A stretch of 64,000 nt of DNA from assembly GCF_963853765.1 (NCBI RefSeq), contig NC_088854.1:24118001-24182000 (forward strand). Reading direction: 5' to 3'. The notes under the pieces are model-generated. The model was not told where the DNA came from and ran no database searches. It was given only the letters and a program-made list of their open reading frames with translations. Origin of the DNA: Magallana gigas. Its lineage: Eukaryota. Shown here in pieces: positions 28,646 through 36,800 of the stretch (positions are counted from its first letter, which is position 1; each line of letters opens with the position of its first letter). The translations under genes were made by a program, and so were the position numbers.

Positions 28646-29137
28646 TAAATGATATCGTGAATGCAGTCACAATGAAAATCTGAGTTATCTCCCTGTAGCT
28701 GCAAACCACACCTTAAGAGGAAACACAGTATAGTCTGAAGATTCAAGACCAGGAGATTCCATGGATAGATGGCCAGACAAGATACATTTTACAAAACAAA
28801 ATATTATATGGTTTAATTCATAAAAAAAAACTTAGATATCAGTACATGTATCCCATGAGACAGGACAAGTAGGTTAATTTATCTCTATTTCATTTGTATC
28901 CTTTAAAATTTTTCCTTGGGATAATTCAAAAATATTTTTTACACAAAGAAAGTCCAATGTAGCCTAATTTCCAGTTCAACAAATTTGTTTTCATTTAGAA
29001 TGTACTAAATATTTTTCAGATTCCATATCCATGGAAACACCACCAATCTTAATTATCGTAATACAGAATATATGACCTGAGATTCAACTACCGGTATTAC
29101 ATATCTATATGTATCAAATTTTCACCAAAATGTCAGT

Positions 29138-32100
29138 TTATACAGATTGTTGGACAGGAGGTTCGTACCCCATGGGCCGCGCTACAGCTTCACCAAAGTC
29201 GGTGACAGTGTTCTTGGTTTCACTATACCCCTCTCCATGGATTTCCATTAATTTTCTGAAGTCAAATTTGGGTTTTTTCAGCACTTTCACTTTACAGATG
29301 AAGACATTATGTAGTGGATAAATTCCTTCGCAGGCTTTTTCAATTTCCTTGCCAATGCTGTCTGGGATTCTGTTCAAACGAGAAGAATAATCATCACTGC
29401 TACATGGGTGTGTTCTCCGAACGCCTACTCCTCAATTAAAAATAATAATTGGTCAAGGCAATTATGGGGCCCTCTAAGGGGACACAGGTAGACTTTACCT
29501 GTATATACTTTGGGACACAGGTAGACTTTACCTGTATATACTTTCGTTCACAGGTAGACTTTACCTGTATACACTTTGGGACACAGGTAGACTTTACCTG
29601 TATATACTTTGGGACACAGGTAGACTTTACCTGTATATACTTTGGGACACAGGTAAATACTTTACCTGAATATACTTTGTGACACAGGTAGACTTTGTCT
29701 TATTTTTAATTTAAAAAAAGATGCAATAAATAGTGCTAATGGCTGCATGTACCTGACATTATATTAAAAATACCATATTTTTTTAATAACCTAAATGTTT
29801 CACTGAAATAAAATAATCATTAAATAAAAAAAATTAAAATTAAATATCTTTCTTCAGTTTTAAACTTACATCTTAACAAAATAAGAATAAAACATTATTT
29901 CTTAAGGTATAAATTAAGAAGAGATTTTAAATGATGATTATCTAAAGTATGACTGAGTTAAAATTATGATAAAAAATCACTTTCTTCAACAAGTTTGTCC
30001 AAGCTGTGAATAAATAAATGAACGTGGGGAAACTGATAAGAAGAGCAGCCGTCCTACCCCTAGTTCCTGATCTAGACAGCATCGAAGACGTGTGGTCCTG
30101 GAAGACCGCGATGAAGCCGACCTTACGGAAGTGAGAGAGACCTTTACAGACTATATGTGACAGAATAGTGGGTGAATGGTGACAGACTTATTTGGAATCA
30201 CTTCGGAACCAATGGACCACGGACCAATAACAACTTAAAAGCATGGCACGGGAAGCTGAAGAGGATGGCCCTACACGCGCACACAAACATCTACACTGTC
30301 ATCAAGATCTTCAAGGACATCCAGAACGGCAAAGAAATTCTACAGATCCAGAAACAAAGAAGTACGCGAACATCAAGAGGAGACTGCAGACCCTGAAGGA
30401 GCGATACCAAGACGGGATCATCGACCTTATGACCTACGCAGATTCAGCTTCGGAACTTCTTTATTTAGGACATTGACATAGTGACAGTGAAAGAGAAAGG
30501 ACATTATGACAGACTCCGTGCCCATACTAGTATATGTGTAAATATTGTATATATATACTGGTATGAATTATACTTTTTAAAACTTAATGTCATTTTGAAT
30601 TGTTATTTATGTTTTAGACAACCATGTATTTATGAGTTTGTTATAAAATAGTGCTATGTGTAAAAATAAAAAGAAAACTGTATATAAAATGTTATGCAAT
30701 TTTAAAACATTATTTTATTGTTTTAAATTATATGTAGTGCTAAAAAATTAAATAAATATATTAAAATTGATTCAATGTTTTCATTTTATTTATGCAACAA
30801 TTTTAATTATAAAGACATTAAAAATTTAACAAAAATTACAAACTGTTATATTATTTTTCATTCAAGGAAACACAGGTAAAGTTTACCTGTGTCCCTTTAG
30901 AAGGCCCCATAATTGCCCTGTATAATTGAATAATGATAATTTGGCAGTAGGCGTTCGGAGAATCAGCCGCTACATGTATGTGTAATGGTAACAAAACATT
31001 CAAAATCATCAAATGCATTCACCAAGCTCATCCATGGTTATTAAGTAACCAAGTTTTAGCAAATACATGTATATACCAAGTTCCTAATGAAGGAATATTT
31101 AAACTTTTTTAAGGGGGGGGGGGGGGGGGGAGAGGGTAGGGTAGGCTGCTTGACTCTACACCTGAATTTGTACATGAGGTGACTTTAAAGGGCCTCTAGC
31201 ATCTTGTTACAGACTTCATTAACTTAGAGGTGATTGAATGTTCCCCTACAGGTAATACAGGTAAAATTTGGCAATTGACATACGCCATAATTTCTGTCAG
31301 GAGAAGCTGAAATTCTAAAATGCTAACAAAAAAAGATAACTACATATTGTAAATGTCATTTAAGGAAGGAGTCTTTTTATTATCAAACATACTTCTTATA
31401 ATAAGAAATGCATGAAATTTTGACACAGTCAAACGGATCATATTACTTAATGATTCTATCAGTTTAATTAAATTTGACCTTTTTGTTTTCGGATAAAGGT
31501 CAGGTCAAGGTCACTACCTTTTTCCTCAACGTAAAGAGTGATAAGAATAAGTGTAGCTCTTTATAGTTCTGTAGACATTTGTTTAAGATTTGAAGATTCA
31601 AATCTTCAATGAAATCATAGACCATGAGAGTGTCTATCAGCTTATACTACTAAATTGGAATAAATGTTTATACTAAAATTGAAATTGCTTAGCCCGCATT
31701 TCCTCTAATTTTCTTAAATTTTGAAGAAATTTTGATTATTTTTTTATGCTTCCAATAATAAAATATTTCTAATTTTTATGTATTATGAAGACTTTATATA
31801 AAGATATAAATTGACAGAAAAGCTAATATATTGACCGTTTCATAAGAGAGAAAAACTGATTTTAGTGATTTTTTCACAAAAATCAATGTTTAGAATGGGC
31901 GCTTTAAAAAGCTTATAAAAATGTTATTTGATAGGCAAATCATATTTTAAAAACATATTCTGAAACCCAAGTATCATATTATTAGTTCACATTTGTAAAA
32001 AAAAAATCCAACATTATTGTTATTGTTTTTAAAATGATAAAACAGACTCATTATATATATATAATTTGCAGCAATTCTGAATTGCGCAACATGTGATATT

Positions 32101-35100
32101 TTCCTACGCCAAAAATATAGTCCTTGTTCCATTCTAAATATTGATTACATTTTTCTATGCCAAGTTGTATGATAGTAAAAAAGAAAGAAAAATATACTAT
32201 TTTAATTTCCTTTCATCTTGATTTAATGAACAGTTAATCAAATTTACGTTTGACAAGTCGAAAACCAGACAAGACTCCTTCCTTAATTAGTCACTGTGCA
32301 ATTAACAGCATGTAAATATTAATGAGACCTATTTTTTAATCTGAGAGCAATTGGCATCTTCTACTTACAATTTGTTGACCACTTCTTTCATGTCATTTGA
32401 TGTCACTTCCTTAGTGATGATATCAACCATCTTTCTTCTGATGGTTTTGATCTGTAGAAGAAGTCACAAATAATGTGAAAACATGATTTCAGTAGAAAAA
32501 TATTGCATTACAGCAAGCTCTACAATTTTAAGCAAAAGAATGTTCTTTATACAGTATTTTGAAAAAATATGCAAATACATCAAATAAGTATGCCTACAAC
32601 TTTTATAAAACTTTGTATGAAATTGTGCTAGCTTCTTGCAAGTTTATTTCAGTGCATTAAAATTTCATTCCAACCTGTGTATTTTGAGCATAACAAGTTT
32701 TCTTCAATTGATACACCCTCTTCTTGGTGAAACCAATACAGAACATCCTAAGAAGGTAACCATCAGTGGTCTTGACATCAACATGAGCCTGGATCATGGT
32801 TTGCCATTTCTTGACCATAGAGCAGAGTTTGTCACGGGTCAGATCCATGCCGTGGAAGTTGGTCAGAACATTGCGCCCCTGAACTTCTTCAGCCATCAGT
32901 TTGAACTTCCTGAAGGATACTTCATCATTCTGAAGATCAGCCAGGGAGACCTCAAACACTCGCCCCTTCAGGCCATCAGAAGCAATCCCTGTAATTAACA
33001 CAATATAAAAATAAGCTACAAATAAGCTATAATAATTATACGAATTTCCTATTTTTGCTTGGCTAGCCAAGCCTGTTAATGGTTGTGTAAACCCAATTCC
33101 TTTTGAGGGTCGACTGGGCTTTCCCAGGGCCCCATCCTCACCAAACATGAAATCCCAAATATGGGATACCCTGTGTTAGCCATCCCCTTGAAAGATACAT
33201 GATGATTTTCTTACCTTCTTGCCAGACTAGCTAATTATGTCAATGTTCAGATCAGGTCAGCAAGTAATAATTTTTATTTTATAACTGTTTCTTTCGATCA
33301 AAAAAGGAAGTTTATATTGAATTTTGATTTTACGTTTATTAGCATATTTACGGTAATTTGAGTAGCGAACCGACCACAGAATTCTATCCGCTATTCGAAT
33401 AGTGAAAAGCGAATATGACTCCAACTTCTGAATGCCCATAAGAAAGCATTTAATTCTTAAAGATCTTTTTTGAAATTTACTTTTTAATTTTTAGTTTATG
33501 TTTGTCCTCGAGGATATTCTATTGCTTTTTTCTAGATCTATTCTCCCTAATACATGTGGTTTTTTTCTACGGCATGATGATTATACATGTAGTCTCAACT
33601 GCAAAAGGGGTGCGCTATTGTCGTGCCATTCTTAAAGTAATGACGACAAATAAAACAAATCCCAAAGATGACAGAATATCTCACGACATCACACTTACTG
33701 GTTCCTTGAGTTCTGGTGACCAAGGTCTTCCCAATCTGTCGCACAACAAACATGCTTGGTGCCTTAACATCGTACCAGTCTTTCTTAGTGAAGGGATCAA
33801 TTCTAAAGGATGTGAAACAACCAAAAAAAAAGAAAAGAAGAAACACAATAAAAAGCATGTTCAGGCATTTGATCTATACTAATACTATAGTGGAGTGACA
33901 ATACCATCAAAAAGTTTATTTTAATGTACCACCCTACCCCACGGCTAATTTGTACTTTTTTGGAAAGATATTATAGTAAGTAATAATTTTCGCCATGGTC
34001 AAATTCTAAAATACTAGTAATTAAAGGTCAAAGATCAATGACTGAAATATGAGCAAACATATACAAACTGAGATAATCTGTCAAAATTCGCGAATTATTT
34101 ATCAATATTAAATATTTTTATAATATTTTAGCTTTTGTAAGTTGTATATATTGATCTGAAACCCCAAAAAGTTACCGATAATGTATAAATTGTATGTTTG
34201 TATTATGAAGCGTTTTCCTTCAAATAACTATCATACATTTAACTGTTAAAATGTAAATTTATATAAATATTACAACACTATCATATACAAATTAGAAATT
34301 AATACCATAAAAATTAAAATTAACAAAAGAAAAACAAATAATTTTAATGACTTTACATGTATATAAAGTAAGTTAAAAAATGTTTGCTTCGATTAAAAAA
34401 GGGTGGTATAGAAGGGGAGAACCCAGTCCCCTGATGCTACTTTACTGCTGGTCTGAATGGTTTTAATGACCTCATATACAGTTTTCCAGATAAGCTTGAT
34501 ACATGTAGTTCGAGATGATCAATGTTCCTATATGGTGAAAAACAACCGAAAATCCGATCTTTTCACAAACCCTATTATGCATACACTATTTAAAACAAGA
34601 GGCCCACGAGCCCCATTGCTTACATGAGCAAGTGTATGGGTTTTTTTCGGGGGGGGGGGGGGGGGATAACATAGTACCATTATTCGAACCATCTTTTCCA
34701 GCCAAGGGTTTCTGGTCCGCACTGCTTCTCACGGTGCATCCACCAATGAACACCCTTCATATTTTTTCAGATTTTTAAATCTTCCAGATAAGTCTGTAGC
34801 TGCGCAGTTCGACAGCTGTTCTGTGCGATTAAAAATGCATTGTCTTGTTCTTGTATGCATACTTTTCAAACAAAATGACATGTTGAACGTCATATTTATT
34901 GCTTTTGTTTATCTTTTGACAACAGTTTTAGTAAGTTTTGGACAGAAACAAGCCAGGTCAAGAAATGTTTACAGTTTTCTTCTCAAACATAAAAGATGGC
35001 CGGACATCCCCCTTAAACTAAAATTAAAAACAAATCTATATTGTGCTGTCTCCCCGCCCTCTTTGTCATTGTGACCTTACTCTCACCTTAGATGTTTATG

Positions 35101-36718
35101 GTATGGGAAAATAGTAAAAAACTTCATAGAATTATCCAAGCTTCTAGATAATAGATTTACTTCTCGAACGGATTGCTTACCGATTTTACACTCTGAAATA
35201 TGTCAACAATCGGCACAATCGGTTTTCTACTTTCAGTATCAAATATTTCACCCCGTTAAGGAAAGGAAATAAATTAGAGTTTCCTCTCTAAGTAAAACAA
35301 TACAGCGGACAACCTCATGATCATTTAACAGGTCGGGTACACTACCTTATATGGATAGCATTATTTAACACGTGACAGTATTTTTGGCAAACAGATTCTC
35401 CAATCCAGTGAATGAGTTGCAATGCATGACGGTCTATAACGTGTTTACGATTCAACAAACGCACGTGGTATTTGTCTGTTTTATACACAATATTTAATTG
35501 CTTGCCGGAATGTTTGTACGTCTTGATTTTTACTTTAGAAGGTAAAAAATTAAAGATTACGTACCATTAACTTTGTTCCATGCTCACATTAAAAAATACT
35601 GTTGTTTTAGTTGACTAATTGTTGCTTCAAAAATGATCAGTATCAAACGACTGACAAACATACGCATACAAGTACAAACATATTTTGATAAGAAAAAAAC
35701 ATCACATTTGTGTATTGGTGACTTTATTACTGTGCACTAGAAATAAATACGGTAACTGTACATTTTTTAACATACGTGAATACTAGTAGCCACGGTAGTA
35801 GAAATGCCCAAATATACAAACGCGGAAGCACAAGCTATATGCAGCATAAAGTATTTTGTCCGTTAAGCATTCTGATGAATGTCCCTGAAGAAAATATCAA
35901 CGCGTGGTTCTACTAATATTGTCCCAAATATGGGGTATCACGTGAAAAAAACAGTACTCACTGCTTTTAATTCAATAGGACGTACCTCTCTTTTGAACAT
36001 TGACAATGGGGTATTTAAATAGGTTGATATAAGTCCTCATATGCAATATTTTTTAAATCTGAGCATAGAAATTGAAGTTCAGACATAATTGTCCATATTA
36101 CTTTCATAAATTCTGAAAAATCATTCAAAATGAGTTTCCAAAGGACAATTCAAAATAGTATATATTTTCCATACGATTTGTATACACTGAAACTTGTAGT
36201 AGCCCACAATGCCTTGCAACTCATTCACTTGATTGGTTTGTCGATAAAAGTAAACAGGTGCCTAATTTAGTATGCAAATTTATGCCGACGTCACAAAATA
36301 TAGTGGTCTCGACCTGTTTAAACATAGAACCATTTTAACAAGACCTTGGACTTTTAGTAGGGCGTAGTTATCTTTTCCTTGGGTCAAAACAAATAAAAAT
36401 GACGCGGTTTCAAGCGAAATATGCATCGATTGCGTAGTCTTTAACTCAAAAGCCATACAATTCTTGTTGATTTCAAAGAGCCATAGCCGAGTGGCTAGCA
36501 ATGAAATAGACACGCCTACGTCACATTGCTGTTTGACACAACTACCCAAAGTCCAAGCTCTTGTTAAATGGTTCTATTACAGTACTTAACTATTAACTGT
36601 AAGACGATAAGGTAAAATTAACATACAGTTTCTTCTTTTTTAACCTCTTCATCATTTTCATTGATGGTAGCGGCTGAGATTTTCGTATTCCCATATTCTG
36701 AGATTTTCCTCTCGCCAT
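29138..36718 (-). CDS. RPS3A: 40S ribosomal protein eS1/S3a, divergent paralog (copy B), 274 aa
   Basis: Exons 36627-36718, 33699-33802, 32675-32988, 32369-32451, 29138-29369; phases match copy A. Core [14 protein letters not shown]...LADLQNDE...KTTDGYLLR is intact. Novel N-terminus [31 protein letters not shown]. The 5'UTR motif GCCTCGAAC is shared with copy A. Exon 1 is the least certain part. Confidence 0.88.
29454..30920 (+). mobile_element. Mutator-like (MULE) deletion derivative with transposase remnant
   Basis: TIRs GGCAATTATGGGGCC...GGGACACAGGTA at both ends; seven 33-bp subterminal repeats at 29479-29699; frameshifted C-terminal transposase fragment at 30040-30476 ([22 protein letters not shown]...[13 protein letters not shown]). 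Confidence 0.8.
30040..30476 (+). pseudogene. MULE transposase C-terminal fragment
   Basis: RTNNxxxAWH motif typical of animal MULE transposases; split between the ORFs at 30172 and 30243. Confidence 0.7.
31364..32282. mobile_element. Kolobok-like non-autonomous DNA transposon
   Basis: TTAA|GGAAGGAGTCT...AGACTCCTTCC|TTAA: TTAA target site with purine-purine termini. Confidence 0.75.
36325..36576 (+). mobile_element. Academ-like MITE (copy 1, in intron 1 of RPS3A copy B)
   Basis: TAGAACCATTTTAACAAGA...TCTTGTTAAATGGTTCTA TIRs (TAG...CTA termini); near-identical inverted copy at 39074-39318. Confidence 0.75.
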
Positions 36719-36800
36719 GTTCGAGGCCGTTTAAAGGAATTGACAGAATATTGCGAACGAGTTGTGCAAGAGTTTCGGTATTACCGGCAGCCATTTAATG
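36719..36800 (-). promoter_or_regulatory. Putative promoter of RPS3A copy B
   Basis: On the minus strand, a pyrimidine TCT-like start TTCCTTT precedes GCCTCGAAC and the ATG, with a YY1-like AAATGGCTGCC at 36787-36797. Confidence 0.5.

What the first reader, a model, noticed from the sequence alone, without database searches (positions are those of the whole stretch)
29138..36718. Intact, divergent eS1/RPS3A paralog with a new N-terminal tail: candidate specialised-ribosome protein
eS1 is very conserved, yet copy B replaces [22 protein letters not shown] with [32 protein letters not shown] (10 aa longer, with a duplicated KSQ/GAAAATCTCAG unit). It also changes KKQFQV to KRVYQL, DVFIRK to NVFICK, DIGKL to DFRKL, and the [12 protein letters not shown] segment. 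All five exons, splice sites and phases are intact, and it keeps a homologous 5'UTR with TCT-like and YY1-like motifs. It has lost the intronic snoRNA and I saw no AATAAA near its stop. eS1 sits on the 40S platform near the mRNA exit site (established), so a tissue- or stage-specific variant, for example in the germline, is a plausible inference.
Basis: partly seen in the sequence, partly recalled or inferred. Interest (0 to 1): 0.8.

Follow-up and report, generated by a model that had tools for sequence, protein, structure and literature searches.

The report
Low-expressed oyster eS1 ribosomal-protein duplicate
The Pacific oyster has a real, intact and correctly spliced second copy of the ribosomal protein gene eS1/RPS3A with new protein tails, but its RNA was about a thousand times rarer than the normal copy in the one run where it was seen, and it evolves under relaxed constraint, so it looks like an ordinary young ribosomal-protein duplicate, not a shown "specialised ribosome" part.

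Summary
On the minus strand at 29138-36718 there is a five-exon, 274-aa eS1/RPS3A gene (copy B). It lies 3 kb downstream of the canonical 262-aa copy A (39904-43269).

- **Identity.** The window is Magallana gigas. Copy B is already a RefSeq model (XP_019920998.3). No paper on it was found.
- **Transcription.** A 1047-nt RNA contig joins 36627 to 33802 exactly, so B is transcribed and spliced.
- **Level.** In four raw RNA-seq runs, the B 5'UTR/exon 1 stretch had depth 0, 0, 0 and about 0.5-1. Copy A had 50-1200, so B/A was about 1/1000 in the one run where B was seen.
- **Age.** B sits between A and a BTB/BACK gene only in M. gigas and M. angulata. That interval is empty in C. virginica, Saccostrea and Ostrea.
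- **Mosaic.** Exons 2-4 are homogenised with A (dS 0.04-0.09, and the differences segregate within A). Exon 5 is old (dS 0.75). Exon 1 aligns with A at only 69%.
- **Selection.** On the B branch, exon 5 has 16 replacement and 14 silent changes (omega about 0.3, p=0.002 against neutrality). A has 0 and 7. B is altered at several near-invariant eS1 residues.

Verdict: a lineage-specific, weakly expressed duplicate under relaxed constraint. The specialised-ribosome reading remains speculation.

The parts
36627..36718 (-). Copy B exon 1 (CDS), encoding the novel 31-residue basic tail. It is 30 nt longer than A's exon 1. M. gigas has a 12-nt insertion here relative to M. angulata.
36719..36864 (-). 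Copy B 5'UTR, at least 146 nt as seen in RNA contig L003. It holds an out-of-frame upstream ATG at 36794. This opens a 57-codon uORF that overlaps the main ATG and ends in exon 2.
   Evidence: the upstream ATG is conserved in M. angulata
33699..33802 (-). Copy B exon 2, 97% identical to A's exon 2.
32725..32988 (-). Copy B exon 3, converted part: 4 silent differences from reference A in about 264 nt. At least two of them (A positions 42047 and 41939) are the majority allele in A transcripts, and one (41876) is a minor allele.
32675..32724 (-). Copy B exon 3, 3' patch that escaped conversion in this allele (KRVYQL...N): 9 differences in 49 nt. M. angulata B and RNA contig L003 have the A-type sequence here.
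32369..32451 (-). Copy B exon 4, 97.6% identical to reference A. Both differences are alleles seen in A transcripts.
29138..29369 (-). Copy B exon 5 with its stop codon: 83% nt identity to A, 16 replacements and a 2-codon insertion.
29062..29137 (-). Copy B 3'UTR as far as RNA contig L003 shows it. The parental AATAAA is mutated to AATACC, and the poly(A) site is not determined.
39904..43269 (-). Copy A, the canonical eS1/RPS3A gene (5 exons, 262 aa). It is the gene-conversion partner of B and is highly expressed.
29403..30976 (-). M. gigas-specific insertion in B intron 4, absent from M. angulata B. It contains a 33-nt x 6.5 tandem array at 29479-29696. Further M. gigas-specific insertions lie at about 31340-32282 and 35329-36316.

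Best explanation
Copy B is a real tandem duplicate of the eS1/RPS3A gene, restricted to the genus Magallana. It is transcribed from its own upstream start. Its 5'UTR is at least 146 nt long and carries an overlapping upstream ORF. It lacks the parental AATAAA and is spliced exactly as modelled. Its mRNA was undetected in three bulk RNA samples and about one thousandth of the parental copy in a fourth. Exons 2-4 are kept almost identical to copy A by recent, exon-limited gene conversion. Exon 1, the last 49 nt of exon 3 in the reference allele, and exon 5 escape conversion. These parts have accumulated replacements and in-frame indels under relaxed but non-zero purifying selection. Inferred, not shown: the protein could probably still enter 40S subunits, because the part modelled in solved ribosomes is about 95% identical to A. 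It would then act as a minor, redundant or cell-type-restricted eS1 isoform. It is more likely on a slow path of functional decay or drift than a dedicated 'specialised ribosome' subunit.
For: Gene structure and intact ORF. Only two loci in the genome. Identical to RefSeq XP_019920998.3, with an M. angulata ortholog XP_052721485.1. Spliced RNA contig L003 covers 36864-36627 joined to 33802 and runs through to 29062. Exon 1 words are held by 11 RNA-seq runs of 4 studies. Expression: the bins covering B's 5'UTR/exon 1 have depth 0/0/0 in X36, X38 and X44 and 0.5-1.0 in X48, against A exon depths of 46-356, 12-84, 0.5-14 and 350-1190. Gene conversion: dS(A-B) is 0.04-0.09 in exons 2-4 and 0.75 in exon 5, and the introns are unalignable. 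Difference density is 7/449 against 49/271, Fisher p=1e-15. A transcripts carry the 'B-type' letters at 42047, 41939, 40942 and at the last bases of exon 4. Selection: on the B branch exon 5 has 14 silent and 16 replacement changes (omega about 0.32, binomial p=0.002 against neutrality). The A branch has 7 and 0 (Fisher p=0.012). Age: the order PDZ - A - [B] - BTB/BACK has B only in M. gigas and M. angulata. In the exon 5 tree B joins the Magallana A node on a long branch. Loss of parental features: upstream ORF, AATAAA>AATACC, replacements at near-invariant columns V3R, N6S, K7Q, G13M, D196E, Q202E, D209N, R213C, G226R.
Against: Long-term omega below 1, three or more in-frame indels and an ORF open in every haplotype seen argue that selection kept the protein for much of its history. 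A real restricted function therefore cannot be excluded. Tissue and stage of the four runs are unknown, so a germline or embryonic burst of expression would have been missed. Within one study some runs hold B words and others do not, which hints at sample-dependent expression. The M. gigas-M. angulata comparison (8 replacement to 2 silent changes in exons 1 and 5) is too small to separate omega 0.3 from 1.
Confidence: 0.6

Rival explanations
1. Specialised-ribosome paralog. B would be made in a particular cell type or stage, for example the germline. It would enter 40S subunits and change translation through its new N- and C-terminal tails near the platform and mRNA exit. Selection would protect the tails from gene conversion.
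For: The ORF is intact, correct splicing was seen, and B-branch omega of about 0.3 is significantly below 1. All indels are in frame. The tail stays strongly basic. Most tail changes lie in segments usually left unmodelled in solved ribosomes: many deposited chains cover only B residues about 29-243. The core fit could therefore be kept. B words occur in some RNA runs but not in others of the same study.
Against: B/A was about 1e-3 in X48, and no B read was laid in the other three runs. B is found only in Magallana. The tail itself is unstable: M. gigas and M. angulata differ by a 12-nt indel and 4 replacements in 80 nt, which is at or above the intron rate of 3.8%. There are radical changes at near-invariant residues inside the ordered core, such as R213C, D196E and G226R. 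The upstream ORF overlaps the start codon. By its abstract, a systematic test of noncanonical ribosomal-protein paralogs in Drosophila gave no evidence for specialised functions (PMC12704716, seen).
Confidence: 0.12
2. Non-functional, decaying duplicate. B would be a transcribed pseudogene-in-waiting. Its ORF stays open mainly because 61% of the CDS is continually rewritten from copy A by gene conversion, and the rest has not yet been hit.
For: Expression is extremely low. The poly(A) signal and the short parental-type 5'UTR are lost. B-specific exons differ between M. gigas and M. angulata at about the intron rate, with 8 replacement to 2 silent changes. Invariant residues are replaced. Independent eS1 duplicates in Ostrea edulis (no annotated exon 1, omega about 0.3) and in Pecten maximus (exon 5 dN about equal to dS, both 0.04) show that such copies arise and degrade repeatedly.
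Against: B-branch exon 5 has significantly fewer replacements than neutral expectation (p=0.002). There is no stop or frameshift despite about 30 substitutions and at least 3 indel events in unconverted exons. Splice sites are all canonical in both species.
Confidence: 0.26
3. Assembly artefact or haplotig: B would be a mis-assembled allele of A.
For: None beyond the high identity of exons 2-4.
Against: B has its own introns, flanks and exons 1 and 5. The same A-B tandem is in an independent M. angulata assembly. An RNA contig carries B-specific exon 1 and exon 5.
Confidence: 0.01

Closest known systems
Canonical eS1 / RPS3A (Pfam PF01015 Ribosomal_S3Ae), here copy A at 39904-43269
   Same: Same five-exon structure and phases. 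There is a PF01015 match. Residues 32-155 and 169-205 are identical to A. B aligns end to end with eS1 chains of solved 40S/80S structures.
   Different: The near-universal N-terminal MAVGKNKRL...GGKK motif is replaced and lengthened by 10 aa. There are replacements at near-invariant columns, including D196E, Q202E, D209N, R213C and G226R. The C-terminal segment is rewritten. B mRNA was about 1000-fold lower in the one run where it was seen. The 5'UTR is long and has an upstream ORF, and there is no AATAAA.
Animal ribosomal-protein paralogs with restricted expression (RPL3L, RPL10L, RPL39L, RPS27L and Drosophila eRpL22-like; named from general knowledge and from titles and abstracts listed)
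   Same: It is a duplicated ribosomal-protein gene with an intact ORF, a diverged sequence and much lower bulk expression than the canonical copy.
   Different: No tissue specificity, ribosome incorporation or phenotype is shown. The copy is confined to one oyster genus, and most of its CDS is still being homogenised with the parent.
Duplicated genes evolving in concert by exon-limited gene conversion (general knowledge; not checked in the literature here)
   Same: The pattern is a mosaic of near-identical coding blocks between unalignable introns. Differences are shared as polymorphisms.
   Different: Terminal exons escape conversion. Whether that is due to selection or to a divergence barrier is unknown.

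Membership tests
eS1 / RPS3A (PF01015) | Sequence match to the Ribosomal_S3Ae family over the whole domain | tested here: met
   PF01015.24 is precomputed for the identical protein P0001. phmmer against PDB eS1 chains gives E=1e-136, covering B residues 22-274.
eS1 / RPS3A (PF01015) | Conserved N-terminal basic motif ([18 protein letters not shown]) found in over 90% of 130 eS1 sequences | tested here: not met
   B has V3R, N6S, K7Q, L9M, G12M, G13M, a change at column 16 (A has S, consensus G, B has L) and a 10-aa insertion. Basic charge is retained.
eS1 / RPS3A (PF01015) | Stoichiometric component of the 40S subunit | not testable with these tools
   There are no proteomic data. mRNA was about 1/1000 of copy A in X48 and undetected in three other runs.
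Specialised / tissue-specific ribosomal-protein paralog | Expression pattern distinct from the canonical copy, dominant in some cell type or stage | tested here: inconclusive
   B is near zero in 4 raw RNA runs. It is assembled in contigs of other RNA runs. Sample identities are coded, so tissue is unknown.
Specialised / tissue-specific ribosomal-protein paralog | Purifying selection on the paralog-specific parts | tested here: inconclusive
   Long-term omega is about 0.32 and below 1 (p=0.002). Recent M. gigas-M. angulata divergence of exons 1 and 5 (10/312 nt, 8 replacement to 2 silent) is about equal to the intron rate of 3.8%.
Specialised / tissue-specific ribosomal-protein paralog | Conservation of the paralog across a wider clade | tested here: not met
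   The syntenic A-to-BTB/BACK interval lacks B in C. virginica, two Saccostrea species and O. edulis. No B-type C-terminus was found elsewhere among the proteins searched.
Processed (retro)pseudogene or disabled pseudogene | Loss of introns, or frameshifts and stops | tested here: not met
   All four introns are at parental positions with GT-AG ends, and the ORF is open.

The most novel reading that the evidence does not exclude
B is a Magallana-specific eS1 isoform made mainly in a cell type or stage not sampled here, for example gametes or early embryos. Its lengthened basic N-tail and rewritten C-tail would then alter 40S platform interactions. Selection would keep the tails from being overwritten while conversion maintains the core.
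Probability: 0.12. Interest if true: 0.65.

Novelty: new member of a known kind. Interest (0 to 1): 0.33.

Why it matters
If B were incorporated into ribosomes in a defined tissue, it would be a rare non-model example of a small-subunit platform protein variant, and the specialised-ribosome idea would become testable in a mollusc. As things stand, its main value is different. It is a clean case of a ribosomal-protein duplicate whose core is held by gene conversion while its terminal exons drift. It is also a practical warning: A and B share exons 2-4, so transcript assemblies and Ka/Ks screens in oysters can mix them. One oyster study lists RPS3A among 'positively selected' genes (PMC6611504), and this confusion is one possible cause that I did not test.

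Tried and rejected
- **Assembly artefact:** rejected.
- **Ancient pteriomorph-wide paralog:** I considered this because Pecten maximus has a tandem copy with a divergent N-tail and Ostrea edulis has a second copy. All three paralogs also change the same Ser of the TDSGE segment. I rejected it because each paralog groups with its own species' canonical copy (support: pecB with pecA 100/100, oed2 with oedA 98/96). Pecten dS is 0.04. The shared Ser change has a chance probability of about 0.1 by my own arithmetic. The 'IDPF' seemingly shared with Pecten B is also present in Pecten A.
- **B orthologs by C-terminal search:** only Magallana was found. P0127 to P0132 are not B-type.
- **Rfam scan for snoRNAs in both genes:** no snoRNA hit. 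The only hits were weak plant-miRNA-like matches to a hairpin repeat at 38741-38834.
- **AlphaFold2 model of B:** too poor to use (mean pLDDT 52), so I made no fold search.
- **Literature:** searches for K1QPM8, XP_019920998, SRR85510 and 'ribosomal protein S3a' with Crassostrea gigas gave nothing specific. The single-nucleus atlas preprint does not mention this gene.
- **Logan look-up of the exact copy A protein:** not on record, so relative assembly of A and B in SRR8551079 could not be judged.
- **Exon 3 of contig L003:** it equals the common A haplotype. I could not decide between an assembly chimera and a fully converted B allele.
Full report
**What is there.**

Reading the minus strand of 29000-37000 and assembling the five proposed exons gives an 825-nt ORF of 274 aa. 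The exons are 36718-36627, 33802-33699, 32988-32675, 32451-32369 and 29369-29138. Every intron is GT..AG.

A tblastn of this protein on the window finds a second eS1 gene 3 kb upstream on the same strand. This is copy A, with exons 43269-43208, 42866-42763, 42063-41750, 41013-40931 and 40129-39904, encoding 262 aa. A six-frame search of the whole 564-Mb assembly with the exon 3 peptide finds only these two loci.

- the N-terminal 22 aa are replaced by 32 aa;
- KKQFQV becomes KRVYQL, DVFIRK becomes NVFICK, and DIGKL becomes DFRKL;
- the segment after GEG is rewritten and carries a 2-aa insertion.

**Identity and prior knowledge.**

The protein is 100% identical to RefSeq XP_019920998.3, 'small ribosomal subunit protein eS1 [Magallana gigas]'. 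An ortholog of 270 aa is annotated in M. angulata (XP_052721485.1). So the gene model is already in public annotation. Searches of the paper library found nothing that discusses it.

**Is it expressed and spliced?**

A 1047-nt Logan contig from run SRR8551079 (L003) encodes a 274-aa B-type protein. It aligns to 36864-36627, then 33802 onward, then B exon 4, then 29369-29062.

Exon 3 of that contig is identical to the common A haplotype. It is either an assembly chimera or a fully converted B allele, and I could not decide which.

Exon 1 words are held by 11 runs recorded as RNA-seq, from 4 studies. Exon 5 words are held by 20 runs from 11 studies, of which only 2 are recorded as RNA; the rest are guessed or unknown.

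**How much?**

This stretch contains B's 5'UTR and exon 1 and A's exons 3-5, so both copies are measured in the same raw reads.

| Run | Depth over copy A exon bins | Depth over 36600-36999 (B) |
|---|---|---|
| X36 | 46-356 | 0 |
| X38 | 12-84 | 0 |
| X48 | 350-1190 | 0.5-1.0 (about one read pair, on the expected strand) |
| X44 | 0.5-14 | 0 |

B mRNA is therefore about 1/1000 of A in X48 and undetected in the other three runs, where A's own depth sets a looser limit.

Caveats:
- Tissue and stage are hidden behind coded sample names.
- Human-like reads are silently removed. That can only lower A's depth, not B's.

**A mosaic made by gene conversion.**

Nucleotide identity between A and B by exon is as follows:

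| Exon | A/B nt identity |
|---|---|
| 1 | 69% |
| 2 | 97% |
| 3 | 96% |
| 4 | 97.6% |
| 5 | 83% |

The introns do not align beyond about 6-28 nt next to the exons. Silent-site divergence between A and B is 0.04-0.09 in exons 2-4, the same as between the A copies of M. gigas and M. angulata (0.05). In exon 5 it is 0.75, against 0.60 between M. gigas A and C. virginica A.

Difference density is 7/449 outside the patch and 49/271 in the 3' patch of exon 3 plus exon 5 (Fisher p=1e-15).

The reads add a direct observation. A transcripts, identified by their junction to A-specific exon 5, carry the 'B-type' letters at 42047, 41939, 40942 and at the last bases of exon 4. These are at 100% in X36 and X38 and at 68-100% in X48. 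The few reference A/B differences in exons 2-4 are therefore segregating polymorphisms, not fixed differences.

The exon 3 patch (KRVYQL) is A-type in M. angulata B and in L003, so conversion tracts vary among alleles.

**Age and distribution.**

The gene order PDZ(-) - A(+) - B(+) - a 443-aa minus-strand gene is seen in M. angulata. That last gene sits where the BTB/BACK gene lies in the other species.

In C. virginica, two Saccostrea species and O. edulis, the interval between A and the BTB/BACK gene has no eS1-like sequence.

A search ranked by similarity to B's C-terminal 76 aa found no B-type protein outside Magallana.

In an exon 5 tree the B pair sits on a long branch (0.2 changes per site). 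It joins the Magallana A node and lies apart from the virginica/Ostrea/Saccostrea clade (support 84/93).

O. edulis has a second copy 130 kb away with an intact exon 2 but no recognisable exon 1. Pecten maximus has its own tandem copy with a different short N-tail. Each groups with its own species' A copy (support 98/96 and 100/100). These are therefore independent events, or locally converted copies.

**Selection.**

I polarised the exon 5 differences with four outgroup A copies.

| Branch | Silent changes | Replacement changes |
|---|---|---|
| B | 14 | 16 |
| A | 7 | 0 |

- B's omega is about 0.32, below neutrality (binomial p=0.002) but far above A (Fisher p=0.012).
- All indels in unconverted exons are in frame.
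- Between M. gigas and M. angulata, the A proteins are identical (0 replacement and 6 silent changes over exons 2-5; the exon 1 sequences are identical).
- Over the same interval, B exon 1 differs at 5/80 nt (4 replacements) plus a 12-nt indel, and exon 5 differs at 5/232 nt (4 replacements).
- The intron rate is 3.8%.
- Recent evolution of the B-specific parts is therefore not distinguishable from neutral, but the counts are too small to exclude omega 0.3.

Against 130 eS1 sequences, B departs from columns that are 86-100% conserved. The departures are V3R, N6S, K7Q, L9M, G12M, G13M, K15R, D196E, Q202E, D209N, R213C and G226R. E252M replaces an acidic residue (E or D in 98% of sequences).

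Many PDB depositions of eS1 contain only the part matching B residues about 29-243. The new N-tail and most C-tail changes thus fall in segments usually not modelled. The exon 3 patch and E206, E212, N219, C223, F235, R236 and I241 lie in the ordered core.

**Regulatory features.**

- B's RNA contig starts at least 146 nt upstream of the ATG.
- This ATG opens a 57-codon out-of-frame ORF that overlaps the main start. It is conserved in M. angulata.
- The ATG has T at -3 and G at +4, while the main ATG has A at -3 and G at +4. Leaky scanning is therefore possible (an inference).
- A/B similarity upstream of the ATG is only about 25 nt and is not above shuffled controls.
- A's AATAAA is AATACC in B, and the first canonical-variant signal (ATTAAA) is about 325 nt past the stop.
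- Rfam finds no snoRNA in either gene, so I did not verify the 'lost snoRNA' beyond the lack of intron similarity.

**Conclusion.**

The evidence fits a genus-specific tandem duplicate with these properties:
- very low bulk expression;
- a core maintained by conversion from the parent;
- terminal exons drifting under relaxed constraint.

A restricted, functional isoform is not excluded. A specialised-ribosome role has no positive support here.

Noticed in passing
window 39904-42063 (copy A exons 3-5): RNA reads show that the reference A haplotype is the minor one in several samples. Non-reference alleles at 40069, 40102, 40942, 41939 and 42047, and at the last bases of exon 4, reach 55-100% in X36, X38 and X48. 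Those in exons 3-4 match the copy B reference letters.
   Followed up: partly
window 38741-38834: A hairpin repeat between A and B gives sub-threshold hits to several plant MIR families. RNA reads cover it on both strands, with a 73-nt 'skip' joint from 38749 to 38823. It looks like a MITE-type inverted repeat, not a curated miRNA.
   Followed up: no
window 39074-39318 and 36325-36576: A 250-nt element (92.5% identity) lies in opposite orientation downstream of A and inside B intron 1. It is covered by reads on both strands with many loose ends, so it is probably a dispersed repeat.
   Followed up: no
window 29479-29696: A 33-nt tandem array (6.5 copies, 91% matches) lies inside an insertion of about 1.6 kb in B intron 4 that M. 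angulata lacks.
   Followed up: partly
window 41470-41695 (copy A intron 3): Reads map on both strands at depth 4-51 with loose ends at both borders. This suggests a transcribed repeat inside the intron, distinct from the C/D-box-like candidate at 41243-41322 noted by the scan, which has no poly(A)+ read cover and no Rfam hit.
   Followed up: no
L005:9953-13045 (Ostrea edulis) and L007:10001-15950 (Pecten maximus): These are independent extra eS1 copies. The O. edulis copy lies 130 kb from the canonical gene and has no recognisable exon 1. The P. maximus copy is tandem, has a shortened, divergent N-tail, and has its exon 5 split by an extra intron. All three bivalve paralogs replace the same Ser of the TDSGE/TESGE segment with F, Y or L, which has about a 0.1 chance by my estimate.
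   Followed up: partly
P0002 (RefSeq copy A model, 287 aa): The RefSeq model of copy A starts at an upstream in-frame ATG, adding 25 residues before MAVGK. This is probably an annotation artefact, given the pyrimidine-rich start region just upstream of the canonical ATG.
   Followed up: no
PMC6611504: A breed-versus-wild C. gigas transcriptome study lists RPS3A among genes with Ka/Ks above 1. Mixing of copies A and B in de novo transcripts could produce this. I did not test it.
   Followed up: no
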